DNA of 36,945 bases. Origin: Macrostomum lignano (lineage: Eukaryota). The notes under the pieces were generated by a model that did no database searches, had not been told where the DNA came from, and saw nothing but the letters and a program-made list of their open reading frames with translations. Positions 3,940 to 33,332 of this stretch are shown in pieces (the stretch's first letter is position 1; the number at the start of each line of letters is the position of its first letter). The position numbers were made by a program, and so were the translations under genes. Location: the NCBI GenBank assembly GCA_002269645.1, contig NIVC01001707.1, forward strand, positions 1 to 36,945, read 5' to 3'.

Positions 3940-4062
3940 GCCGGCAAAGCGACGATTTCAATCAACTTTTTTCGATTGTTCCGAGCAATGCGACTTGTCA
4001 AGTTGTTGAATCGAGGAGAGCATCTGCGCACGTTGCTGTGGACATTCATCAAGTCGTTTCAG
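3940..4062 (+). CDS. Cav1: L-type Ca channel alpha-1 (Cav1) exon: repeat IV S4 and S4-S5 linker
   Basis: tttcag|GCC...TTTCAG|gtaggt; translates [41 protein letters not shown], matching Cav1 IVS4 ([32 protein letters not shown]); phase 0-0. Confidence 0.96.
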
Positions 4063-4898: not shown

Positions 4899-5106
4899 GC
4901 CCTTCCGTACGTCGCCCTGCTCATATTGATGCTGTTCTTCATCTACGCCGTGATCGGCATGCAGATGTTTGGCAAAATCCGGCTGGACGCCAGCACGCAG
5001 ATAAACCGGAACAACAATTTTCGAACGTTTTTCTCGGCTTCTCTGGTGCTCTTCCGATCGGCCACAGGCGAAGCTTGGCAAGAAATTCTGCTGGACTGCG
5101 TTAACG
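4899..5106 (+). CDS. Cav1: Cav1 exon: IVS5 and pore helix with selectivity-filter glutamate
   Basis: ttccag|GCC...AACG|gtatgg; [27 protein letters not shown]...NRNNNFRTF...[18 protein letters not shown]; phase 0-1. Confidence 0.97.
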
Positions 5107-5909
5107 GTATGGAGACATGTTGGAGGGAAGCAGCTTGAGGGTTTACCTGGCTCTGGGTGCCAAAGTGACTCATAAAATCCATCTTCATTCTCATAACCCA
5201 CTCAAAAATGATCAAGCAACCAGAATCAGGTGGGTCGCGAATCAGTCCAAATCCTCATTGGATTTGGAGCATAGCTATGGACAAAAACCTACTAAAGGAC
5301 TTTGATGCACGATTAATAATGAAAAGAACATTTTTTCTTTTCTACCTTTCAAACGTAATTTTCAAGTTTCTGCTTGCTTAAAATATTATTTAAAATATGA
5401 AAAATTATAATTTATTCCCTACTTGTTGCATCTATTGTCGGCGCGAACGGCTGAGGAGTCGTTTCTGGGTCCGAGGCGAAGCAGAATCGTGGCCGAAACC
5501 GTTCGTTGCCATCGATAAGTGAAACAAGCGGGGAATGCGGTGTCTCTGCAGAACAGGGCATTCACCCACTTCAGCAGCATTGGAGAAGCCTTCAGATTCA
5601 CAAATTCGTTCTAAATTATTTTTTCTATACAGTCATCGCAAATTTAAAATCATCAGCTTTCAAAACCGTCAGAAAAGTGACTTCGGGAAGATTGAGTTTC
5701 GTTTAAAACACTGCATTTTTAGTTTACAAATCCAAACCAGTTTTTTCAGCGATTTAATAAAAACTTCAGATCTTCAGGATCTTCAGCGGGATGGAAACTG
5801 AGACATTTAGTGCGAGTGAAAAGTCACCGTTCTGTTAATGGGGAACGCAAATAAATTGGTTACTAAAATGCATGCCAAACAACCCAAAATATGAATCGAA
5901 ACGTTTTAG

Positions 5910-6115
5910 ACCCATCGGTGCTGTGCGATAAACACAGCGACAGCTACAGAGCATTCGAGGAGGCCATGGAAACTCACGTACTGCAGAGCCTTAACGGCAC
6001 AATACCTATGGGAAACGTGTTTTACCTCAACAGTTCTGTGCTGCACGAGAGCACATGCGGCAGTCCCATTGCCTATCCGTACTTTATCAGCTTTTACATG
6101 GTCTGCTCATTTTTG
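5910..6115 (+). CDS. Cav1: Cav1 exon A of a duplicated pair: IV post-pore extracellular loop and first half of IVS6
   Basis: ttttag|AC...TTG|gtgagt; (D)PSVLCDKHSDSY...TCGSPIAYPYFISFYMVCSFL; phase 1-0, 206 nt. Confidence 0.93.
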
Positions 6116-6210
6116 GTGAGTCAATATTCAACCAGACAGTTAGCTAATTGCCTAGATTTTCCTCCCCCTTTTCTTCCATTCATTCGCCGCGCATAACGCG
6201 TCGAAATCAG

Positions 6211-6350
6211 CCAAGCGAGGCTGCGATCACAGCAGCGACACTTACATGTTTTGGAACCACACGAGGCATTCGAACGGCAGCGAACCGGGCTGCGGGACGG
6301 CCCTCGGCTATCCCTATTTTATCACTTTCTATGTTATCTGCTCGTTCTTG
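6211..6350 (+). CDS. Cav1: Cav1 exon B of a duplicated pair (alternative IV loop/IVS6)
   Basis: aatcag|CC...TTG|gtgagg; (A)KRGCDHSSDTYMFWNHTRHSNGSEPGCGTALGYPYFITFYVICSFL; phase 1-0, 140 nt; paralogous to exon A; not in the supplied ORF track in this frame. Confidence 0.88.
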
Positions 6351-6627
6351 GTGAGGCGAGCCGAGGCGGCAGGGTTTATGAATAAATAATCAAGCCGGTT
6401 TTGCGGTGGGAATGAAATGAATTAACTGAACAATGCGCCGTTTATGCTTGGTTTTGATAGCATCCAATGTACTATTTATTGAATGCTTTTCAATGCTCAA
6501 CTTGAATTTAATTCAGAGATAAGGGTGACCACTTTTGTCGCTTTTGACCTTGAATTCCGAGACGCTACTTCCCCTCCCGCCACGTCACGACTTCTCTCAT
6601 CAGAAATGTATACACCTCACGCCTTGA

Positions 6628-6778
6628 CCTCACTCCCCGCGCCCACCTCACTCCCTGCACCTACACGTACCTCACTCTCTGCACCCACATCACTCCCTGC
6701 ACCCATATCACTCCCTGCGCCCACCTCACTCTTTGAACCCACATCACTCAGCATCACCCACCTCACTCCCTGAACCCT
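6628..6778. repeat. 18-bp minisatellite (CTCACTCCCTGCACCCAC)n, ~8 degenerate copies
   Basis: Direct inspection; explains the TSLPAP periodicity of ORF 6483..6773. Confidence 0.85.
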
Positions 6779-7187
6779 ACAAATGCCCTCCAAATTTCCC
6801 AAAGAACTGCATTTGGTCTTGGAAAGTAGCACATTGTCTTGTTTTGGGACTGGACGAAAATTGCTTTGCCGCAGTACTACATGTGCTGCAATACTGCTTG
6901 CTTGCCAGGAGCTTCCATTTGTTTAAGATTGCTGTGGATCTCGTCCCAAAAAACTTTCACAACTTCAGGCATGTTATCGAAGCATTGCTAATTGATCAGT
7001 AACATATCGTAAGCTAATGAGCTTCAAGCATCGATTTTAATAACAGTTTTTAAGCATTTTATAGTCCGTGAATGCTTCAAAGGTATTATTGAACGTCAAA
7101 GAAAAATGCATGGCATTTTATGCAGTAAAACTTTGCAAAGCTTATTATTCTATTGCTGATGAATGTTATCAATGGTGATTAATTTAA

Positions 7188-7346
<159 letters not shown>

Positions 7347-8062: not shown

Positions 8063-8159
8063 AGGCCGAATCAAACACCTGGACGTGGTGACCCTGCTGA
8101 GAAAGATCGATCCGCCACTGGGATTCGGCAAACTCTGTCCGCATAGAAAAATATGCAAG
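8063..8159 (+). CDS. Cav1: Cav1 exon: EF-hand region
   Basis: ttccag|A GGC...AAG|gtgggg; [32 protein letters not shown]; phase 2-0. Confidence 0.96.
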
Positions 8160-8260
8160 GTGGGGCTGCTGAAAGACAAAGTTCAAGTCTACTACTTAGT
8201 ATAAGTAGTAAGTGTGGATTTTTTATTGCAATGCCGATATATTTATTTTGCCACCCACAG

Positions 8261-8363
8261 CGCCTTGTGTCGATGAACATGCCGCTAAACTCAGACGGGA
8301 CAGTGATGTTTAACGCTACTCTGTTCGCTCTGGTCAGAACCAACCTGAAAATCAAAACAGAAG
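8261..8363 (+). CDS. Cav1: Cav1 exon: pre-IQ region
   Basis: ccacag|CGC...GAAG|gtaaga; [34 protein letters not shown]; phase 0-1. Confidence 0.97.
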
Positions 8364-10548
8364 GTAAGAATGAAGCCTTCAAATAGCAAAAAATCAATTT
8401 CCAAATAGAAGTATCACGGGATATCTCTCTTCCGTTACACTTAATTAGAACCATAAAGTTAATTAAAAAGATACGCTGATGAGCATTGCTCACTTTGCCT
8501 TGAATTTAAAGCATACTGATACATTGCTGCTCTAGACGGAAACAATCATAGTATTATGTTATTTAATTTTACTTTCCTACTATACTTCACAGTACTAGAT
8601 TAGTCCGCGCTATTAACAAAATATGGAATACAATTTTAATTTTTCCTCTTAGCTTGAGTAGCTTTTGTTAATATTTGATAGAAGCTATTATTACATGCCG
8701 ACTATCAGTAGTATAGGCTGAAACATGCAGAGCAACCTATTTTTTAAGATCTTTACAACTTTTTTTCTAAAAATCTTATTTACTAACACCCAAAGCTGAT
8801 AAATAAGCTTAAAATAACAAAACTTATCTTCTTGTTTTTGTCATTAATTTAGGCAGAGGTAAAATAACACCACGCTTTACCAGCAAACGAATGCACAACC
8901 GACTTCAGTTAAATATTTATTTGTTTATTTGTTTTGTTTGTTTATTAGCGCCATAAATTACTTAATTTTGTCCTATAGCTTTTCGTACCTTGTCGCTTAC
9001 TATTGGAATAAATTCATGCTTTTTATGAAAACTTCGGGGTCAATCGATGGAGATGTATTAGCTAGATACCTGCTCAATTTACCTCGGAAGTCTTTCGCAA
9101 CTCCTTAGATGAAAATATTTTCAGTTTTCACCGTCAGAACGTTCTGCTAGTTAGTTGACAAAAATCAGGCAGAGAATAATATTAATGATCTACATATTAC
9201 AGTATATCAAATGCAGCCTCCTAAAAACACGAATAGCTTTTCTCTTTATAGTTTTCTTAAACTTCTTGACAATTTGGGTTTTGTTGTTAGAAGATAAAGG
9301 TACTAGGGGGTGAGGCTGTATATAATGCATATAGTATATCGAAAAATATTGTACTAAAACTTCTCGTGTGTATACTGCACGCGAATGTAACAAGCGCGTA
9401 GACCTTTTTAGACTGGCGTTTCACGATGTGTGTATTAGCAGTTTTACACCTGGCTGTACCGGAGCTTACCGTATATTTTAACTAAAATTTTAATTCGTAA
9501 TAACTATATTTTCATTACTATAAAGCAGAAATACAGCTCATTTATTTCTTTCTTCCCATGCCACGGAAATTCCTGTTTGCACCCGTCTGGGCGTTGACGT
9601 TTACAAACATTTTATTTGTTATATCGTTCAGACTGTAAAATCACGAGCAGGGAAGGAAAATAGGTCGTATGGTACATTACTAAAAGAAATGGGAAGGATA
9701 ATAGCTATATGGATCTTGTAAGCACAAGCCACTCTGTTATTCAAGCTTTTTAAACAAGCAACGACGCGTACTTCATGCATTGTGTAGTAACACTGAGACG
9801 TTTGAGTGTAATACGGAAAGCTTATTCGATTAGCGCACCGATCCGGAAGGCAATCTTGAATGTCTAGCGCTCTAAAAAAGATTTTTTGTTTAAGGTTTAC
9901 GAGCGGAATGCTAGATGAACATGTTTGCATTCCGCGCCACATATCGACGTTCACCAATGCATCCAACGTTAGCCGACGTTGATGGACGTCGTTGGTAGAT
10001 GATTATTTAACGATGTTTTACCTCGGCCGAAACTCCGGTGTAATATAAAAGTATCCGATTGCTAGCGACGTCAATAGGCGTTGGAAACGTCGGATTGCTG
10101 TATGAACCTGTACATCTGTGGAAAAAAGTTTTTCTGTTAATTAGACTCTTATACGAGCGAAGATTCATCTTTCACAGTGTGGTTTCAATATCCAATAACC
10201 GATATCTTATGTCTGATGGGTTTTGTTACAAAAAGTGAGTAAAATATGAAAAGAAATCGCTGCAGTTCCCAGTATTCATCATAAATATATTTATTTATTT
10301 TTGTATACTTTTTTGGCTAACATATTCCGAAGCACAGAATATTGCTGGCTATTGCTGCTTGACTGTGCATGGTGCCGCTTAATATGATTTATTATATTTC
10401 TACAAATATGTTCAACAGCTAAGAAAACGCTCCGCTCATAAAAACGATCATAGCGACCCCAAGCTTCTAGCTTCATTTCATTAAACCGAATATGTGACAG
10501 TAAATTCCCATCTTTAACCGTAAGTTTACCATTGTTACTCTGCTACAG

Positions 10549-10656
10549 GCGATTGCAGCATCGACCAGTTAAACGAAGAGCTGAGAGCTGTGATTAAGAA
10601 AATCTGGAAGAGAACCAGCGTTAAGCTACTAGATCAAGTGGTGCCACCTGCTGGAA
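10549..10656 (+). CDS. Cav1: Cav1 exon: pre-IQ helix
   Basis: ctacag|GC...GGAA|gtgagt; (G)[35 protein letters not shown]; phase 1-1. Confidence 0.96.
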
Positions 10657-10805
10657 GTGAGTAGTTCAATATCCTTCATGTCAACTTCTGTATTTTCTAT
10701 GCTCCTATTTGATGCAGGTTCTTAAACAGTTTCATGTTGCAACTCTCCAATTCGGATACTCCGCTCGCACTTATACCGTTGCAAATCGCTCTCCCAACAC
10801 TCCAG

Positions 10806-10960
10806 GAGAGGACGACGTCACAGTCGGGAAGTTCTACGCAACCTTCCTCATCCAGGATTATTACAGGCGCTTCAAGAAGCGCAAAGAGAAGCAGAAGCAG
10901 CTCGGCCAGCTAGGGATGGGCGGCGGCTTGCATAAAGATGAAGGATCTAACATTCTCAAG
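10806..10960 (+). CDS. Cav1: Cav1 exon: IQ calmodulin-binding motif
   Basis: ctccag|GA...AAG|gtaaga; [27 protein letters not shown]...SNILK; phase 1-0. Confidence 0.97.
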
Positions 10961-12530
10961 GTAAGAAACTGTCTGAACAAGGAAAAGATAATTATGCTTG
11001 AATGGGAATAATGGTTAGTTCGTTTAGATTCTAAATAGTGACAACGAAGTCGAAGACTGAAAAAGCTAAACAATATCCATTGCCCTTTTCACTGTCCTTT
11101 TTTAGAATGAGGCAAGTATACTAGAAATTTTAATCTTCCTATCCTCATGCAGCCAACTTCAACTTCTTGATCTTGCTGCAACTTTCGCTAGTTTTTCATA
11201 TTTCGTTTTACAATTTTTCGTCTTAATAATTCAGTGCACTTTAACTGCCATTTAACCTGCAAAATGTTTGTTTAAATACTTTGAAGAGACATTCAGACTT
11301 CTTTCGTTTTCCTCGTTAATTATTGCACTCGTGCTCCTCAATACTAGACAAAAGACGGATCGTTAGTTAGGATTTGCTAGAATTGCATTTAAGAAAACGT
11401 TGTGTCAATTCATTAACTACTCACTCGACAGAGTATTCAGGGCTTGTCAAGATGCCGCACCGGTGTAACGGATTTGTTGTTTTTCATTAACTTATACTTT
11501 TATATAAATTCATCAAGATTGAATTATGCATCGGTTGCCAAAATGTATCATTATCAGAGTTTTGGACACTTGGAATTGCATGAGTTTCAGGTAGAGATAG
11601 GTAGAAACGATAAGACGAGCACTTTTAATGAAAACACTCATGTCATTATGAAAAGGTATTTTTGAATAAAGACATTGTCCAAAGTTAATAATTCGAAATA
11701 ATTTCGCACAAATCTTGCTTAGTTGACAGGAACCTTTATAATACGAGAGTGCTTCCATTTGTTTCATTTTCATTTTGTCCCACACCTCTCTTTCGCACTT
11801 GCTTGCATGAACAAACTCAGTATATCTGCTGCTAATAACATAATTGATTTGTTTTAATGTCTCACTGGAGTTTCATATTTTCTTGCTTTCGCGAAATGCA
11901 ACAGAATTTGCTTTCAGGTAAGTAATTTTTTCTTGAAAAAATTGCAAAGTGCATATCCGCCACATGGTTGACAGCACTTGTTTACTGTTTCAGAAACTTC
12001 TGTTTAACATTTTTAATTTTTGGTAATTACGCTTTAGTAGGCTACACAAATTTACTATGCTGCTTGGATAAAAAAGTGCCTGCAAACCGGAGTACCGATG
12101 TAAGAGATTAGTACTCGTACTCATTTTCCAAGAACTCGCCATGGAGAACCCAGAGTAGATGGACGCTACATTCCTTTAAAAGATTTAACTTGACTGTTCC
12201 CAGTCTATTCACCAATCTGGATAAACTTTTCCAACAGAACTCCAACAAGAGACATACTTTCTCGAAAGTCTAAAATGTGAGATACACCTAGCGACATACA
12301 GCTATGACCCAGTGAATTTGCACAATCTGCTGCGAGTGCAGTGTCTGTCTACTTTAGTGTTGTTCATGGAAATCGCTTTTAGCGGGAAAAAAAACAAAAT
12401 GCCGAATGCAAGAATGAAACCCTGAATATGCATGAATATTTTGAACCGCAATCATCGTGATGACTGGTACAATTGGTTATTTATTTTTAACGCTTGTCCC
12501 TCTGCTCTGCTCCCGACAACCCTTGTGCAG

Positions 12531-26870: not shown

Positions 26871-27371
26871 TCAAGCGCCCCTTTCTACCCCCAGCTCTTT
26901 CAGCAGTCTTCCCAATTTCTTGTTAGGAGCGCACAAAATAAACCCTACTCCCAAGCCTCCGCCCTCTCTTTCCGCACACCCGCCCTCTCTCCCCAAACAC
27001 CCACCCTCGGCGCCGACCCCCAACCCCAATCTTGTCTTACTAAAAATAACAGCTTTAACTAGCTTCCGAGCGATCGACTCACGAAATCCGCTTGAAGCCC
27101 CTATATTGTCTAGTCTCTTAAGCATTTCTTTGTCCCAGCGATTCTTCTCCTCAGGAAAATCTCTATATTTAACATCGTGCCACATGCAGACAGAGTCTAG
27201 CTCATTCACAGGCTCATGCCCAGGATTTGGGTTGTTGTTTCCATCCAGCTGTATTTCAAGAGGATTCAAAGGCCCGCAATATTTATAGCCGGGAAGTGTC
27301 CAGCCTTTGTTTGGATGAGGAAGCTTTTCTATCAGTCCATGTGAATCTATCTTACCACCAGAGCGTTGCAT
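26871..27371 (-). CDS. Parvovirus-type phospholipase A2 (PLA2X-like), 166 aa
   Basis: LPGYKYCGPLN (Ca-binding loop), ELDSVCMWHDVKY (HD dyad), downstream WD; likely start is the ATG at 27371 rather than 27614. Confidence 0.88.
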   Translation of the reverse strand: MQRSGGKIDSHGLIEKLPHPNKGWTLPGYKYCGPLNPLEIQLDGNNNPNPGHEPVNELDSVCMWHDVKYRDFPEEKNRWDKEMLKRLDNIGASSGFRESIARKLVKAVIFSKTRLGLGVGAEGGCLGREGGCAEREGGGLGVGFILCAPNKKLGRLLKELGVERGA

Positions 27372-27401
27372 TATTTTATTTAAAATTTTCTTTTTAAATA
27401 A
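27372..27401. promoter_or_regulatory. 30-bp bidirectional AT-rich intergenic region between divergent PLA2 and integrase
   Basis: TTATTTAAAA (27376-27385) and TTTTAAATAA (27392-27401) form a perfect 10-bp inverted repeat; TATTTAA on each strand 25-29 nt before each ATG. Confidence 0.5.
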
Positions 27402-28430
27402 ATGACAGATCAGAAACTTAAAAAACTCTACTACAGCGACAAAGGATTCTTTGTAGGCAAAAATGCCGTTAGTAAACTCATGGAGCTGAGTAAGGAGCCA
27501 AAAGCTACAGTAGAAAAATGGCTCTCTAAGCAGGCTGTCTTTCAAGTCTATTTCCCACCAGTAAAATTTGAAAGGCCCCATTTCAGTATTTATAAACCTA
27601 ATGAAGCGCACCAAGCAGATCTTTTGTTTCTCCCCAACGACTCAGGCTACAAGTATGCTCTTACAATTATTGACATTGCTTCCAGATATAAGGAAGCTCG
27701 CCCACTCAAGACGAAGAAGTCAGAGGTTGTTGCCAGCGCACTGCAAGATATTTATAAAAACTCTCCGCTCACATACCCCCAAATCTTTATGACCGACCCG
27801 GGTAAGGAATTCATGGGTGTAGTGAAATCCCTTATGGAAAAGAAAAACACAGAGATTCGCTATGGCAGAACAAACTTGCACAGAGACCAGGCTTTTGTGG
27901 AAAGATTCAATCTAACTCTAGCCAAGAGACTATTCACTAAGCAGACAGCGCAAGAACTCAAACTGAGTGCGGGGCAGTACTATACCAAGTGGACAGAAAG
28001 ACTCCCCACTGTTATAGAGCAACTGAACAATGAAGTCACACGCATGACTGGATTGAAACCATCCCATGCAATTAAACAAGACACTGTCGAACTTAAGGCA
28101 TCTCATAGAACAGACAACAACACGACAACCCCACACAACACAAAACACACCTCGAACTACCCTAAGCTTCCAGGAGTTGAATCACCATACATACTGACAA
28201 ACTCTGAGTTTCTACGCTTTTTATATCTACCTGGAGAGCTAGAGAAAGACACCAAAAGAAGAGCTACAGATCCATACTTCAGCCTTGATGTACATAAAAT
28301 AGACAGACATTTTACCTCCGACTCCGGTGACTATTACTTTTTATCTCAAGCCTTTAACCCTAAATCCCCCACACGGTCATTCACTAGAGCTGAACTCCTA
28401 GTGATACCAGCTGACACGGAAATTAATTAA
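27402..28430 (+). CDS. int: Retroviral-like (rve, DDE) integrase of Polinton type, 342 aa
   Basis: HQADLLFL (D), MTDPGKEF (D), FVERFNLTL (E); C-terminal GELE...RRATDPYFS...RAELLVIP; intact ORF. Confidence 0.95.
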   Translation: MTDQKLKKLYYSDKGFFVGKNAVSKLMELSKEPKATVEKWLSKQAVFQVYFPPVKFERPHFSIYKPNEAHQADLLFLPNDSGYKYALTIIDIASRYKEARPLKTKKSEVVASALQDIYKNSPLTYPQIFMTDPGKEFMGVVKSLMEKKNTEIRYGRTNLHRDQAFVERFNLTLAKRLFTKQTAQELKLSAGQYYTKWTERLPTVIEQLNNEVTRMTGLKPSHAIKQDTVELKASHRTDNNTTTPHNTKHTSNYPKLPGVESPYILTNSEFLRFLYLPGELEKDTKRRATDPYFSLDVHKIDRHFTSDSGDYYFLSQAFNPKSPTRSFTRAELLVIPADTEIN

Positions 28431-28446
28431 AATATTAAAATAAAAA

Positions 28447-28902
28447 ATGACAAAGATTGAAACCAGAACCATCAATAAACTCAATAAAATCATTGAATCA
28501 AAGAAACCAGGTCTTATATCAATTAAAGGTATCAAAGTTAAGGTTGATCCCACACAGCAAATAGTTGAGTGTAATGAACAAAGACACAGCATCACAGATG
28601 AAAAGTCAGGAGGAATCCTACCATTAGCAGCTCTTATTCCGATCATTGCAGGCGCTGTAAGTGCCGCAGGTGGTGTAGCTGGAGGTGTAGCAACTGCTGT
28701 TAAAGCTGGGAATGATAGAGCTCACCAGCTAGAATTGCAAAAGATTGCAAGAGACAAAGGTATAACAATTAAGGCAGGAGAGGGCTGCCCGGATTTTGAT
28801 GATTGTGATGATTGTGAGCATAAAAATTCTGTAAGCAAGTCTGACATTGTCAAAGCCATCATGACACTGCACAATGCTGGGTTTACAATAATGCGGATAT
28901 GA
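28447..28902 (+). CDS. Putative virion core/membrane protein with adenovirus pX (mu precursor)-like motif
   Basis: GGILPLAALIPIIAGAVSAAGGVAGGVATAV resembles the adenovirus pX C-terminus GGILPLLIPLIAAAIGAVPGIASVA. Confidence 0.65.
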   Translation: MTKIETRTINKLNKIIESKKPGLISIKGIKVKVDPTQQIVECNEQRHSITDEKSGGILPLAALIPIIAGAVSAAGGVAGGVATAVKAGNDRAHQLELQKIARDKGITIKAGEGCPDFDDCDDCEHKNSVSKSDIVKAIMTLHNAGFTIMRI

Positions 28903-29025
28903 TGAGGTTTAAAACCCCACTTTATCCAGCTTCATAAACCTAACACTACTGATAGGATGTAGAAACAGTTCAACTTTTCTATCAGGGTGGTCACCCTCAA
29001 AATTTTTTTTATATTTTCGAGAAAA

Positions 29026-32000
29026 ATGCCAAAAGCCAATCCAGCAAGAGATTTAGTCAACAAATATTTTTCAAAAGGCGTCTCATTTCAAGACAAAAGT
29101 AATTCACTAAGAGAAGCATGCAAACAAAAGTTCAACACCGACCCTGGTCACCTGGGAAGCTATGAAAAACAGTTGGAAATCATCAATCAATTAGAATCAA
29201 ACCAGTATGCGCCTATAAAAAATTCTGCAAAGGAACACCAAGAGAGGAGTCGCAACTTAGTTAACAAATATGAAACTCTCACTGGTGAAAAAGCAAAGTA
29301 CCCACAAAATAAGCAGGAACAAGAGAAATTAGAGCAATTAATCCATTTAAAAGAGTCGGAGCTTGCCACTGAAGAGATTAATTTTGCACAGACGAAGTTT
29401 ACAGAACATTACATAGAGTACACAATCCCAATAAACGGCACCAACGGTACCACCGCAAACATCTACGACTATAAAGACAGCATCCAATCAGTTGTTGATC
29501 ACACACTCAAAACACGCAAGACTTTAAACTACAGATATCATTCAAGATTGCGTTTTATATGCCTGCAAAACCCACTGAGCATCTCGAGTATTACATGACA
29601 ACAAAGGCAAAGCCATTCACCCCAACAGACACACTGGATCCTTTCCTTCAAGATGTCAATAAGAAAATTGAAGCGTTTACATCCAGAGGTTCCGGATGGG
29701 TCGTGGGAGGGATTCAAAGAGCGACTGTCATGGTCATGAAATATGACCCACTTAAAGCCTCCTCTTATATAGAGCTCCCGCATAAGCTAGCCGGTAAAAA
29801 AGCTTGCATAAATGTTAAAAATAAAGACAATTGCTGTGCTCTATGGGCAGTTCTTTCTGCACTTTTTAGTGTACCTCACCACCCCGAAAGAACCTCAAAT
29901 TATCAAAATTATTTCAACTACTATCTCATCGAATGCGAAAAGAAGGGAATCAGGTTTGACAAAGGAGGCTTGGCGATCTCTCAGATCCCAAAGCTAGAAG
30001 AAGTGTTTAATAACAAAATTAGAATCACAGTCTTTGAGTGGAGTGAAAAAACTGAGAAAGTTCAACCGGTCAGATGTAGCAAAGACGTTTTAGATCCGAG
30101 GGGAAAAGGCGGACTGAAGTGGATCTTCTAGTGATTGGTAATTTACTAGAGGAGGCTCACTATGTTTGGATTAAAGATCTTTCAAGACTCATTCACAAGC
30201 AGTTGAATAATCATCACGAGGCTGTTGCCATCTGCCGCTTGTGCCTTAAGCATTACAGTGGACCTGAACGCTTTGAAAAGCTAACAGAGCATGAATTATC
30301 ATGCGAGGATCACCCGACAAACTGCTCTCTTCCTTCAGCTGAAGAGAAGTATCTCCGGTTTAAGAACTATCACAAGATGGAGAAGCTCCCATTTGTTGTA
30401 TATGCTGATTTCGAATGCTCAATCGTGCCAGAAACTCAAAAACAACTCCAACTCAAAAACAAACTCCAACTCAAAAACAAACTCAAACTCAAAAACATAT
30501 CCCCAATTCAGTAGCATATGCCTTTATTAATACAAAAGGACTTGTTGAGTATAATTATTTCTTTGGAGAGCAGTGTGTGGAGCAGTTTATTGCCAGAATG
30601 TTAGAGTTGCAAAAAGTGATTAGCACCCTTCAACCTGTTCCAATAATGATGACTGAGGAGGATGAAAGCAATTTCCTATCAGCAACTCATTGCCACATCT
30701 GCAGGAAACATTTAACTTGCACTAATATTAAAAACCCCACCGTTAGGGACCACTGCCACTATACTGGGAAATTTAGAGGTGCAGCGCATAACACCTGTAA
30801 TCTAAAGCTAAAATCGAACATTCATGATCTAACGATATTTTGTCACAACGCAAAGAACTATGACATGCATTTAATAGTTGAAAAAATCGGCATGATTCCA
30901 GACATACACCTTGATTGCATCGCAGAGAACAAGGAGAAGTTTAAGTGTGTTGATATTAAACAGGATAATTCGGGTACAGGTAAAATAAGACTGAAGGATT
31001 CATATCAATTTCTAGCTGCCAGTCTAGACGAACTAAGCAAGAATCTAAAAGATGAACAATGTACATATACAAAGATGTTTGCAAGTAAAATTAACAACAG
31101 TGATGAATCATTTAAACTTTTAAGAAAGAAAGGCTTCTACCCCTATGAAAATATTACTGGGTATCACGTATTTGAAGAAGGTTTACCACCACAGGAGAAG
31201 TTCTTTTCAAAGCTAACAGACTCTGGAATCTCTGACAAAGACTATGAGCACGCGAAGCATGTCTATAATTACTTTAATTGTCAAAACTTCTTCCAGTATC
31301 ACCTGCTTTACCTCTACACAGATGTGTTTCTGCTGGCTGATGTGTTTGAAACCTTCAGATACACCTGGTACACAGCATATGGCCTCGATCCAGCACATTA
31401 TGTGTCTCTGCCTGCCACTAGCTGGGAATCTTTGCTTAAAATGAAATGGGATCAAGATCCAGATTGGTACATTGAACTTCTTACAGACATTGACATGTAC
31501 AATTTTGTCGAATCGTCAAAGCGAGGGGGATCTCAATTTGCACAGTATGCAAAAGCAAACAATCCCTACATTGAATCTTACAATAAGGAGCAGCCCTCAA
31601 ACTACATTACTTACTTGGACGCTAATAATCTCTACGGGTGGGCGATGAGTCAAGATCTTCCAGTTAGAGATTTTCGATGGCTACCCTCATCAGAATTCAA
31701 ATGGGACTTTTCATTGGCTGCCATTTATGAGGTTGATGTTTACATTCCACCAGAGCTTCACGACTATTTCTCTGACTTTCCACCCTTCCCAGAGAACATC
31801 AAGTGCCCGAAAATAATCGAAACTCCCAATGATAATAATGGAACTTGGCACCTGTCAGGAACAGAAAAAGAACATACAGAGAAACTAACACAGAATCTAA
31901 ACAACAAGACACGTTACAAAATCCATTACAAACTGCTTCAGTATTTTATCTCACTTGGTTGCAGGGTCACCAAAGTTCACAGGGCTCTTACATTTACAGA

Positions 32001-32892
32001 GGAAGCGTGGATGAAACCCTACATTGATAAGAACACCCAGTTTAGGACCAAAGCAACCAACGACTTTGACAAGAACCTCTTTAAGTTGGCCAACAACTCT
32101 GTCTATGGCAAGACTCTTGAGAATGAGCGGAAAAGAACAAACCTGAAACTTGTTACCTCATCAGAGCCTGCTGTTATTCAGGCAAATATGTCAAAGCCAA
32201 CATTCAAAGAACTCCATATCTTTAATAGCTACTTAGGTGTGATCATATTTTACAAAACCAAGGTGACGCTGCGCAAGCCGATCTATACAGGTGTCACTGT
32301 TCTCGACGAATCAAAACGTCTGATGTACCAGTTCTTCTATGGCATGAAGCAGCAGTACAAGGATAAAATGAAACTCTTGTACACTGACACAGACAGTTTT
32401 ATTATGGACATTCAAACAGAAGACATTTATCAGGACATGCTGCAGCAAAAAGATTTGTTTGACTTGTCTGAGTATGATGAATCTTTGCAGGACACAGAAT
32501 GGCGATCAAGTGTTTGACGCCACTAACAAGAAAGTGATTGGGAAAATGAAGGACGAGATTGCTGGTGACATAATCACTGAATTCATTGGGTTGAGAGCAA
32601 AGTCCTATTTTGTAAAATGTGAGTCGTCAGACCCAATAAAAAATCAAAGGGAATTCCGAAACGTGTGGTTAGGAAGGAAATTAATGAAGCTGAATACAGA
32701 GACGCCTTGAATTGCAACAAAAAGACATCACATGAGTTCTCAAAGCTACAATCGAAAAACCATATTATTCACACAATTCAGCAAAAGAAGATTGGACTGT
32801 CAGGTGCAGATAACAAGAGATTCATTTTTGATGACAACATTAACAGTCTACCGTTCGGGCACTGGAGATTAGGTTTAGGAGGTGGAGGTTAG
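29026..32892 (+). CDS. polB: Protein-primed family B DNA polymerase with endonuclease VII-like insert; five frameshifts as assembled (~1290 aa if repaired)
   Basis: ExoI YADFEC, ExoII HNAKNYD, ExoIII TDVFLLADVFE, motif A YLDANNLYG, motif B KLANNSVYGK, motif C YTDTDS, KVIGKMKDE; CHIC...RDHCHYTGKFRGAAHNTCN insert; spans supplied ORFs 28987, 29559, 30119, 30415, 32459, 32665. Confidence 0.95.
30434..30498 (+). repeat. 18-bp coding repeat (ACTCAAAAACAAACTCCA)n in polB; first copy lacks one A
   Basis: Units at 30434 (17 bp), 30451, 30469, 30487 (partial); encodes TQKQTP. Confidence 0.85.
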
Positions 32893-32931
32893 GTTTAGGT
32901 TTAAGAGAAAGTTTAATAAACCTCATAAAAA

Positions 32932-33332
32932 ATGACGACAAATAACTTTCTTGAAGATTTGGCTAACGAACTGCAAATCCCAAACTTTAGAGGAATATTT
33001 ATGAGGGACACTCTGCCTGATTTTCCTCTAAGAAAGAATGCGGCATCATGAACTTTGACACTACCGATAAGCCAGGATCTCATTGGGTTTGCTGGGTGAT
33101 TGATCCCGATCGCAAGCACAAGTGTTATTACTTCGATAGCTATGGGACGGCAGTACCAGAAGAGCTAAGAAATTATATGAAGGGAAAAAATAATAAAAAA
33201 ATTTATCGCTCAGACTTTATTCTCCAAGGTCTTAGCAGTGATATTTGCGGTGAGCTGTGCATGACTGTTTTGTATGCAATGACCAAAACACGAAAGACCT
33301 ACAAGGAAATTCTTCGTACCTGTGTTTCATAG
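32932..33332 (+). CDS. pro: Adenain-like (C5) cysteine protease; one frameshift (133 aa if repaired)
   Basis: N-terminal FRGIFMRDTLP, then GSHWV (H), YFDSYG (D), Q...SDICG (Q/C); one added A at 33033-33035 joins the frames. Confidence 0.9.

What the first reader, a model, noticed from the sequence alone, without database searches (positions are those of the whole stretch)
5910..6350. Tandemly duplicated, mutually exclusive exon pair encoding the Cav1 repeat IV turret and S6
Seen: two consecutive exons with identical phases (1 to 0) and paralogous cores, C-D-x-x-S-D...CG-x-x-x-x-YPYFI(S/T)FY(M/V)(V/I)CSFL. Joining both would duplicate half of S6 and shift the frame (140 nt entered at phase 0), so only one can be used. 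Established: the classical vertebrate Cav1.2 mutually exclusive pairs are 8/8a (IS6), 21/22 (IIIS2) and 31/32 (IVS3); this position is not one of them. Inference: a lineage-specific switch for the pore-lining IVS6 and outer vestibule. Automated annotation would probably miss exon B.
Basis: partly seen in the sequence, partly recalled or inferred. Interest (0 to 1): 0.8.

Follow-up and report, generated by a model that had tools for sequence, protein, structure and literature searches.

The report
Paired alternative pore exons, flatworm Cav1
An L-type calcium-channel gene of the flatworm Macrostomum lignano carries two diverged tandem copies of the exon for the outer-mouth loop and first half of the last pore-lining helix; the reading frame lets only one be used per transcript, so one gene can probably make two pore variants, a known trick at a new site, not yet confirmed by RNA data.

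Summary
Exon A (5910-6115, 206 nt) and exon B (6211-6350, 140 nt) both have AG/GT borders, both enter in phase 1 and leave in phase 0, and both encode the repeat IV post-P-loop turret plus the first half of IVS6 of a Cav1 channel.

- **Reading frame:** either exon alone keeps the frame open. Both together give a TGA at the B/next-exon junction. Skipping both gives a stop after two codons.
- **Age and selection:** the copies are old and constrained (pS 0.71, pN 0.19). Both keep every residue that is invariant in 50 Cav fragments.
- **Source:** the window is Macrostomum lignano.
- **Conservation:** A-type and B-type units recur in other M. lignano Cav1 paralogues. A monogenean (Cichlidogyrus) has the same two-exon layout with the same phases. 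Two trematodes have only the A-type exon, and insect and mollusc RefSeq isoform sets do not vary here.
- **Orthology:** exon A matches the canonical flatworm Cav1 exon. Exon B is shorter and replaces the dihydropyridine-site Met (rat M1464) with Val.
- **Annotation:** public gene models fuse, truncate or break at the pair.
- **Gaps:** I could not obtain RNA evidence, and I found no paper describing the pair.

Verdict: a real, probably functional, mutually exclusive exon pair. It is a new member of a known kind and of moderate interest.

The parts
3940..4062 (+). Constant exon E1: end of IVS4 and the S4-S5 linker ([41 protein letters not shown]), phase 0 to 0.
   Evidence: tblastn with M. lignano P0028 and other Cav fragments; splice borders read.
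4899..5106 (+). Constant exon E2: IVS5, the P1/P2 pore helices and the repeat IV selectivity-filter glutamate ([18 protein letters not shown]). It ends in phase 1 and is the shared donor for A and B.
   Evidence: aligned to Cav1.2 residues about 1360-1428.
5107..5909 (+). Intron upstream of exon A (803 nt). Its acceptor has the weakest polypyrimidine tract of the gene's introns (Y fraction 0.45, longest run 4).
5910..6115 (+). Exon A (206 nt, phase 1 to 0). It encodes a long turret (45 residues Cys to Cys, 2 N-glycosylation sequons, a predicted 16-residue helix) plus the first half of IVS6 (YPYFISFYMVCSFL). It is the orthologue of the canonical flatworm Cav1 exon.
6116..6210 (+). 95-nt intron between A and B. 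It holds a long C/T-rich tract (about 6157-6186) and a CATAAC branch-point-like motif ahead of the AG.
   Evidence: Sequence read.
6211..6350 (+). Exon B (140 nt, phase 1 to 0). It encodes a short turret (24 residues Cys to Cys, 2 sequons, His-rich) plus the first half of IVS6 (YPYFITFYVICSFL). It matches the B-type units of M. lignano paralogues P0028 and P0340.
6351..7217 (+). Intron downstream of B (867 nt), containing an 18-nt tandem repeat at 6612-6777.
7218..7345 (+). Constant exon E5: second half of IVS6 ([13 protein letters not shown]...) and the start of the C-terminal EF-hand region. It is the phase-0 acceptor shared by A and B. Four M. lignano UniRef models start exactly here.
8063..10975 (+). 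Further constant Cav1 C-terminal exons: 8063-8159, 8261-8363, 10549-10656, and the IQ-domain exon from 10806. They place the pair inside one continuous Cav1 gene.

Best explanation
Exons A and B are a tandemly duplicated, homologous, mutually exclusive exon pair in a Macrostomum lignano Cav1 (L-type) alpha-1 gene.

**What is shown**
- Each exon supplies the extracellular loop between the P2 helix and IVS6 (the repeat IV 'turret', with its two conserved cysteines) and the outer half of the pore-lining IVS6 helix.
- The constant exons on either side supply the selectivity filter (E2) and the inner half of IVS6 (E5).
- Exactly one of the two must be spliced in. Double inclusion creates a TGA at the B/E5 junction. 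Double skipping creates a stop two codons after E2.
- Both exons have stayed coding under purifying selection.

**What is inferred**
- The frame rule, presumably backed by nonsense-mediated decay, enforces exclusivity. Steric hindrance probably does not, because the A-B intron is 95 nt.
- Choice between the weak acceptor of A and the C/T-rich acceptor region of B is regulated by cell type or stage.
- The result is two channel variants that differ in the outer vestibule: 45 vs 24 residues between the cysteines, net acidic vs His-rich. They also differ at three IVS6 positions (S/T, M/V, V/I at rat Cav1.2 positions 1461, 1464, 1465). Position 1464 is a known dihydropyridine determinant.
- The isoforms are therefore expected to differ in gating or inactivation, in permeation or block at the outer mouth, and in pore-blocker pharmacology.
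For: - **Anatomy and frame logic:**
- **Homology of A and B:** local score 92 vs 22.6 +/- 4.5 in shuffles; nucleotide repeats at 72-76% identity.
- **Old duplication under constraint:** 28 alignable codons give pS 0.71 and pN 0.19; in the S6 block nearly all synonymous sites differ while pN is 0.10.
- **Invariant residues kept:** both exons keep every invariant column of a 50-sequence Cav alignment, namely two Cys, Y, F and F.
- **Fold compatibility:** AlphaFold2 models of both isoforms give S5, P1, P2, a short turret helix, and an S6 helix continuous across the exon junction. In A the helix is 165-201 with the junction at 179/180; in B it is 143-178 with the junction at 157/158. pLDDT at the start of S6 is 92-96.
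- **Gene identity:** Cav1.2 594 bits vs Cav2 about 402 bits.
- **Source organism:** M. lignano models P0306/P0318/P0319/P0320 match the downstream exons, including 105/105 residues of the non-conserved tail.
- **Conservation of both types in paralogues:** P0340 carries an A-type and a B-type unit in tandem, P0028 a B-type unit, and P0342 an A-type unit. All are open, with type-specific motifs (A: CGSPIAYP..FYM; B: SDxYxxW..EPxC..GYPYF..FY[VI]I).
- **Same architecture in a monogenean:** Cichlidogyrus casuarinus has exons at L002 5372-5865 and 6048-6274. Both are 2 mod 3 and phase 1 to 0; either alone is open and both together give a stop.
- **Orthology of A:** exon A is closer to trematode and planarian Cav1 exons (21-23 of 28 positions) than to exon B (18 of 28).
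- **Predictive value of the signature:** exons with these features are rarely anything other than mutually exclusive, 0.56% of non-MXE exons on the Drosophila X (PMC3228551).
- **M1464 as a dihydropyridine determinant:** PMC2362100 Table 1.
Against: - There is no transcript evidence of any kind. No protein in the 5.8-billion-sequence collection spans an E2-A-E5 or E2-B-E5 junction of this locus, and M. lignano loci are not held by the contig look-up.
- The paralogue evidence is at protein-model level. Those models are visibly mis-spliced, so they show that the units exist and are open, not that they are used.
- The length difference (22 residues) slightly exceeds the default 20-residue tolerance of the published predictor, although all of it lies in the loop.
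- No conserved competing RNA structures were found, only short inverted repeats at chance level.
- Two trematodes manage with the A-type exon alone, so the switch is dispensable in some flatworms.
- The functional consequences are entirely inferred.
Confidence: 0.75

Rival explanations
1. Only one of the two exons is used at this locus and the other is an unused relic. One version of this is that, after the Cav1 gene duplications in Macrostomum, each paralogue specialised on A or on B and the partner exon is decaying.
For: There is no RNA evidence for either exon. Trematodes carry only the A-type exon, so loss of one member does happen. The annotated M. lignano models each show only part of the pair cleanly: P0028 has B and P0342 has a partial A.
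Against: Both exons in the window are intact. They have canonical splice sites, no stops, all invariant residues, both cysteines and N-glycosylation sequons. Synonymous divergence is saturated while pN is 0.19, so a copy that died early would not look like this. The P0340 paralogue also keeps both units open, and so does the monogenean.
Confidence: 0.15
2. Both units are included together in one in-frame mRNA through internal or cryptic splice sites, as the public models P0340 (M. lignano) and P0195/KAL3314000 (Cichlidogyrus) depict. This would give a channel with a very long repeat IV loop containing a vestigial half-S6.
For: Two independent automated annotations produced such models.
Against: The fused models need non-canonical trimming. 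P0195 stops exon 1 at ...FNM and adds 'RC'. P0340 starts B at its first Cys. Meanwhile the full exons have perfect AG/GT borders and matching phases. A second hydrophobic half-helix in an extracellular loop would break the 6TM topology. Conservation extends over the whole S6 half in both units.
Confidence: 0.04
3. The pair is an assembly or haplotype artefact, for example two alleles or homeologues collapsed side by side, and not a real tandem duplication.
For: M. lignano has a duplicated, hard-to-assemble genome with several near-identical Cav1 copies.
Against: The two units share only 72-76% nucleotide identity in short cores, and their turrets differ completely in length and sequence. The flanking intron sequence is not duplicated. 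Both sit between single copies of E2 and E5. The same layout occurs in an independent assembly of a monogenean and in the P0340 model from another locus.
Confidence: 0.02

Closest known systems
Vertebrate Cav1.2 (CACNA1C) mutually exclusive exons 8/8a encoding IS6
   Same: Tandem homologous exons in an L-type channel that swap one S6 pore-lining segment. Only one is used per transcript. The isoforms differ in dihydropyridine sensitivity (PMC5748662; PMC3060452 abstract).
   Different: The vertebrate pair is in repeat I, not repeat IV. Exons 8/8a do not carry a large extracellular turret. That pair is vertebrate and this one is confined to some flatworms. Here the two exons differ by 22 residues in length.
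Lymnaea Cav3 (LCav3) exons 12a/12b, the alternative extracellular turret of repeat II
   Same: Alternative exons give turrets of different length and composition above the selectivity filter without changing the filter itself. In LCav3 this changes Na+/Ca2+ preference (PMC4436565; PMC9694082 abstract). It is a plausible model for what the A and B turrets could do.
   Different: The LCav3 loop is S5-P1 of repeat II in a T-type channel. Here it is the P2-S6 loop of repeat IV in an L-type channel, and the exon also replaces half of S6. In LCav3 the number of cysteines differs between variants, whereas A and B both keep the same two core cysteines.
Invertebrate NALCN exon 15a/15b and 31a/31b pairs
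   Same: Independently evolved mutually exclusive exon duplications in the pore module of a 4x6TM channel, present in some lineages (including planarians) and lost or fixed in others such as schistosomes (PMC4436565).
   Different: Those exons change the selectivity-filter residue (E vs K). Here the filter glutamate lies in the constant exon E2.
Cav1.2 exons 31/32 (IVS3), 21/22 (IIIS2) and other Cav mutually exclusive pairs
   Same: Same gene family and same splicing logic (PMC5748662).
   Different: They affect voltage-sensor or S2 segments, not the pore loop and S6 of repeat IV. None is at this intron pair.

Membership tests
Cav1 (L-type) voltage-gated calcium channel alpha-1 subunit | Sequence closer to Cav1 than to Cav2, Cav3, Nav or NALCN over repeat IV and the proximal C-terminus | tested here: met
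   phmmer vs PDB: Cav1.2 594 bits, Cav1.3 586, Cav1.1 570, Cav2.x about 402, Nav about 157 or less.
Cav1 (L-type) voltage-gated calcium channel alpha-1 subunit | Repeat IV selectivity-filter glutamate in the T-G-E-x-W motif, plus EF-hand, pre-IQ and IQ regions downstream of IVS6 | tested here: met
   [10 protein letters not shown] lies in exon 4899-5106. [20 protein letters not shown] (IQ) lies in the exon from 10806. All aligned to Cav1.2 residues 1321-1637.
Cav1 (L-type) voltage-gated calcium channel alpha-1 subunit | Four homologous 6TM repeats in one polypeptide | not testable with these tools
   The window starts inside repeat IV, and exons for repeats I-III lie upstream of base 1. Full-length M. 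lignano paralogue models (P0342, 1590 aa) carry several Ion_trans domains.
Homologous mutually exclusive exon cluster (tandem exon duplication), criteria of PMC3228551 | Neighbouring internal exons with the same splice-site type and the same reading frame (phase in and phase out) | tested here: met
   Both are AG...GT, both phase 1 to 0, both 2 mod 3, separated by a 95-nt intron.
Homologous mutually exclusive exon cluster (tandem exon duplication), criteria of PMC3228551 | Significant sequence similarity between the exons | tested here: met
   Local BLOSUM62 score 92 vs 22.6 +/- 4.5, 0 of 2000 shuffles reaching it; nucleotide repeats.
   69 vs 47 codons, a difference of 22. All of it lies in the extracellular loop between the two cysteines.
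Homologous mutually exclusive exon cluster (tandem exon duplication), criteria of PMC3228551 | Exactly one exon of the cluster present in each mature mRNA | not testable with these tools
   No transcript data were reachable. The frame argument (both in or both out gives a premature stop) is met, but usage itself is unobserved.
Homologous mutually exclusive exon cluster (tandem exon duplication), criteria of PMC3228551 | Both members maintained by selection, meaning conserved in relatives | tested here: met
   A-type and B-type units are open and motif-conserved in M. lignano paralogues. A two-unit locus occurs in Cichlidogyrus. pN/pS between A and B is about 0.27, with pS saturated.

The most novel reading that the evidence does not exclude
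The A/B pair is ancestral to rhabditophoran flatworms, and lineages later resolved it differently. Macrostomorphs and monogeneans kept both exons. Trematodes kept only A and inflated its turret to 200-260 residues. Cestodes kept a short unit with a B-like S6. On this reading, exon choice sets pore properties and drug sensitivity of the flatworm L-type channel. That includes the Met/Val switch at the dihydropyridine-site position 1464, and the pair is a natural experiment on how the repeat IV outer vestibule and IVS6 tune a Cav1 pore.
Probability: 0.25. Interest if true: 0.65.

Novelty: new member of a known kind. Interest (0 to 1): 0.48.

Why it matters
- **New site:** mutually exclusive exons in four-repeat cation channels are among the best-documented cases where alternative splicing changes protein function (Cav1.2 8/8a, LCav3 12a/12b, NALCN 15a/b). 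A pair that swaps the repeat IV turret together with the outer half of IVS6 has not been described in the literature I could search.
- **Testable variants:** it offers two natural variants of a part of the L-type pore that shapes inactivation, outer-mouth electrostatics and the binding site for pore blockers.
- **Model organism:** M. lignano is a transgenic flatworm model, and flatworm Cav channels are of long-standing interest in anthelmintic pharmacology. The isoforms could therefore be studied directly.
- **Annotation:** current gene models in M. lignano and in a monogenean are wrong at this site (fused, truncated or split). This affects any sequence-based comparison of flatworm Cav1 pores.

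Tried and rejected
- **Transcript evidence:** I searched the 5.8-billion-protein collection with both spliced isoforms. Nothing from this locus spans the junctions. The hit lists were also limited to short proteins.
- **M. lignano genomic DNA of paralogues:** P0028 and a window ORF are not on record in the contig look-up, so dN/dS between paralogous exons could not be computed.
- **Other flatworm loci:** the Heterobilharzia and Sparganum loci could not be read because the gene ranges exceed 100 kb. Cestodes and schistosomes therefore remain untested at DNA level.
- **A B-type exon in trematodes:** a regex scan, tblastn with six unit queries, and an HMM of the S6 block over six-frame translations each find exactly one unit in Paragonimus and one in Opisthorchis.
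- **Docking/selector-type competing RNA structures:** only 12-16-nt inverted repeats at 81-92% complementarity were found, which is indistinguishable from chance. I rejected these as evidence.
- **Steric exclusion:** the A-B intron is 95 nt, with roughly 80 nt from the donor to the likely branch point. It is probably long enough to splice, so I do not invoke steric hindrance.
- **Orthology of the second monogenean unit with Macrostomum B:** only 20 alignable positions are available, with 12-15 of 20 matching everything. This is unresolved.
- **Cav1A/Cav1B assignment of the window gene:** a blastp of the constant exons was not informative because of HSP splitting. I dropped it.

Full report
**1. 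What is at the coordinates**

The + strand around 3.9-11 kb of the window carries consecutive exons of a voltage-gated calcium channel alpha-1 gene. I spliced them as follows:
- E1: 3940-4062
- E2: 4899-5106
- A (5910-6115) or B (6211-6350)
- E5: 7218-7345
- then 8063-8159, 8261-8363, 10549-10656, and the exon from 10806

This product aligns end to end with repeat IV and the proximal C-terminus of human and rabbit L-type channels. Scores are Cav1.2 594 bits, Cav1.3 586 and Cav1.1 570, against about 402 bits for Cav2 channels. The gene is therefore a Cav1.

Exon E2 ends in phase 1 after ...[18 protein letters not shown], so the repeat IV selectivity-filter glutamate lies in this constant exon. 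E5 begins in phase 0 with [13 protein letters not shown], the inner half of IVS6.

**2.

- Exon A is 206 nt and exon B is 140 nt. Both lengths are 2 mod 3, both have AG/GT borders, and both run from phase 1 to phase 0.
- Each encodes Cys-Asp-x-x-Ser-Asp, a variable loop, Cys-Gly, and then YPYFI(S/T)FY(M/V)(V/I)CSFL.
- The protein similarity is far above chance: local score 92 vs 22.6 +/- 4.5 in 2000 shuffles.
- The repeat finder recovers the two conserved cores at 72% and 76% nucleotide identity.
- Explicit joining shows that E2+A+E5 and E2+B+E5 are open. E2+A+B+E5 runs into TGA, made from the last two bases of B and the first base of E5. E2+E5 stops after two codons.

Only single inclusion gives a channel.

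**3. Both copies look alive**

- Over the 28 codons that can be aligned, synonymous differences are saturated (pS 0.71; in the 14-codon S6 block nearly every synonymous site differs). Non-synonymous differences are few (pN 0.19 overall and 0.10 in S6). The duplication is therefore old, and the sum of both lineages has been under purifying selection.
- In alignments with 49 Cav1/Cav2 fragments, both exons keep every invariant column that falls within them: the two turret cysteines and the Y, F and F of S6. The cysteines are the 'core' cysteines of the repeat IV P-S6 loop described in PMC4436565.
- Each turret has two N-x-S/T sequons.
- AlphaFold2 models of both isoforms (mean pLDDT 72 and 74) give S5, P1, P2, a short helix after the first cysteine, and an S6 helix that runs uninterrupted across the exon junction with pLDDT above 90 at its start. 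The turret helix is 16 residues in A and 9 in B.

**4. Where the window comes from, and what relatives show**

*Source.* An exhaustive HMMER scan of 1.84 billion cluster representatives and a cluster look-up show that the downstream exons match four UniRef proteins of Macrostomum lignano: P0306, P0318, P0319 and P0320. The match includes 105/105 residues of the non-conserved C-terminal tail. The window is therefore M. lignano, a free-living macrostomorph flatworm.

*Annotation at this locus.* All four models start exactly at IINLF, so the annotation breaks at the pair.

*Other M. lignano Cav1 models come from paralogous loci.* Their constant exons are 93-97% identical to the window.
- P0340 contains an A-type unit (EPTVLCDKQSEIYQTW...CGSPIAYPFFISFYMLCSFL). 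It is directly followed by a B-type unit (CDRASDAYVDWLAHNRTQEEPVCQQLIGYPYFISFYVICSFL), fused in frame through a cryptic acceptor.
- P0028 ends with a B-type unit (AEAKCDHHSDPYIEWKTHNHSGQTEEPSCQQLVGYPYFISFYIICSFL).
- P0342 uses a truncated A-type unit.

*What this means.* Both exon types exist, open and with type-specific motifs, in at least two to three further loci. The turrets have diverged strongly between paralogues (about 45-55% identity), while the S6 halves have not.

**5. Beyond Macrostomum**

- **Orthology of exon A.** Exon A is the orthologue of the canonical flatworm Cav1 exon. Compare CDKHSDSYRAFEEAM... and ...CGSPIAYPYFISFYMVCSFL in the window with CDRHSDSELKAIRAFLERF... and ...CGSNFAYPFFISFYMVCSFL in Paragonimus, Opisthorchis, Fasciola and schistosomes. 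The Dugesia japonica protein is also similar. Exon A shares 21-23 of 28 comparable positions with these sequences, against 18 of 28 with exon B.
- **Trematodes have one unit.** I read two trematode loci: L001 (Paragonimus heterotremus) and L003 (Opisthorchis viverrini). Each has the same intron positions (phase 1 after CVN-G, phase 0 before IINLF) but only one unit between them. This was checked by regex, tblastn and an HMM scan of six-frame translations.
- **A monogenean has two units.** In Cichlidogyrus casuarinus (L002) the units are at 5372-5865 (494 nt; a long A-like turret starting CDKNSENEHKEIRRYF; S6 half YVYFITFNMVCSLL) and 6048-6274 (227 nt; S6 half YAYFISFYIICSFL). Both have AG/GT borders, both run phase 1 to 0, and both are 2 mod 3. 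Either alone is open, and both together give a stop. The deposited model KAL3314000 fuses them.
- **Other phyla do not vary here.** The multiple RefSeq isoforms of bees, ants, oysters and scallops returned by the search are identical within species over this region. The alternative pair is therefore not a general invertebrate feature.
- **Origin unresolved.** Too few positions are alignable to say whether the Macrostomum and monogenean pairs share one origin.

**6. How it most likely works**

*Shown.*
- The frame rule.
- Intact splice signals.
- The A-B intron is 95 nt.
- The acceptor of A has the poorest pyrimidine tract among the gene's introns (0.45 pyrimidine, longest run 4).
- B is preceded by a long C/T-rich tract set back from the AG.

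*Inferred.* Exclusivity is enforced by the reading frame, with decay of double-inclusion and double-skip transcripts, and not by steric hindrance. Choice is regulated through the unequal acceptors, as PTB does for Cav1.2 exons 8/8a (PMC3060452, cited as an analogy only).

*The two products differ in two places.*
- **Turret.** A has 45 residues between the cysteines (6 acidic, 2 basic). B has 24 residues (3 acidic, 1 basic, 3 His).
- **Three IVS6 positions.** In rat Cav1.2 numbering, I1460, Y1463 and M1464 are dihydropyridine determinants (PMC2362100 Table 1). Both exons keep I and Y. A has Met at 1464, while B has Val (Ile in P0028).

*Functional expectation.* By analogy with LCav3 12a/12b (turret length and charge alter permeation; PMC4436565, PMC9694082) and with Cav1.2 8/8a (an S6 swap alters drug sensitivity; PMC5748662), I expect differences in outer-mouth permeation or block, inactivation and pore-blocker sensitivity. 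None of this was tested.

**7. Comparison with what is known, and novelty**

- The vertebrate Cav1.2 mutually exclusive pairs are 8/8a, 21/22 and 31/32 (PMC5748662). None is at this position.
- Five full-text searches found no description of an alternative repeat IV turret/IVS6 exon in any Cav1, and nothing on Macrostomum Cav splicing.
- The pair meets the published sequence criteria for mutually exclusive exons, except that its length difference (22 residues, all in the loop) is just above the default tolerance (PMC3228551).
- I therefore file it as a new member of a known kind. The gene family is well understood and so is the splicing device; the site and the lineage are new.

**8. Limits**

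- No RNA data could be reached, so use of both exons is inferred from conservation and frame logic only.
- Paralogue evidence rests on imperfect automated protein models.
- Cestode, planarian and schistosome loci could not be read.
- My confidence that this is a functional mutually exclusive pair is about 0.75.

Noticed in passing
window 26871-36000: A Maverick/Polinton-like mobile element lies downstream of the Cav1 gene. It has a PLA2-like ORF (26871-27614, minus strand), an rve integrase (27402-28430), an Adeno_PX-like ORF (28447-28902), a protein-primed family B DNA polymerase (30415-32517) and an adenovirus-type cysteine protease fragment (33021-33329) (Pfam).
   Followed up: partly
window 6612-6777: About eight tandem copies of an 18-nt C-rich unit (CACCCACCTCACTCCCTG-like) sit inside the intron between exon B and the IINLF exon. 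No function is suggested.
   Followed up: no
M. lignano UniRef models P0306/P0318/P0319/P0320, P0028, P0340, P0342; Cichlidogyrus KAL3314000 (L002 5001-7987): Every public gene model is wrong at this exon pair. Four start at IINLF, one ends after the B-type exon, one fuses A+B via a cryptic acceptor, and one uses a truncated A. The monogenean model fuses both units.
   Followed up: yes
L001 23040-23627 (Paragonimus heterotremus); L003 near 32299 (Opisthorchis viverrini); proteins P0185, P0323-P0335: In trematodes the single A-type exon encodes an enormous repeat IV turret, roughly 190-260 residues between the two conserved cysteines. It is low-complexity, rich in N-glycosylation sequons, and highly variable between species.
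   Followed up: partly
window 4899-7345 compared with L001, L002, L003: The two intron positions flanking the pair (phase 1 after CVN-G, phase 0 before IINLF inside IVS6) are shared by all four flatworm loci. Many arthropod and nematode-like genomic ORFs in the hit lists run through IVS6 without an intron.
   Followed up: partly
M. lignano proteins P0028, P0340, P0342 vs window: At least three or four distinct Cav1 loci exist in M. lignano. Their constant exons are 93-97% identical but their turrets are strongly diverged. This is consistent with the duplicated genome of this species.
   Followed up: partly
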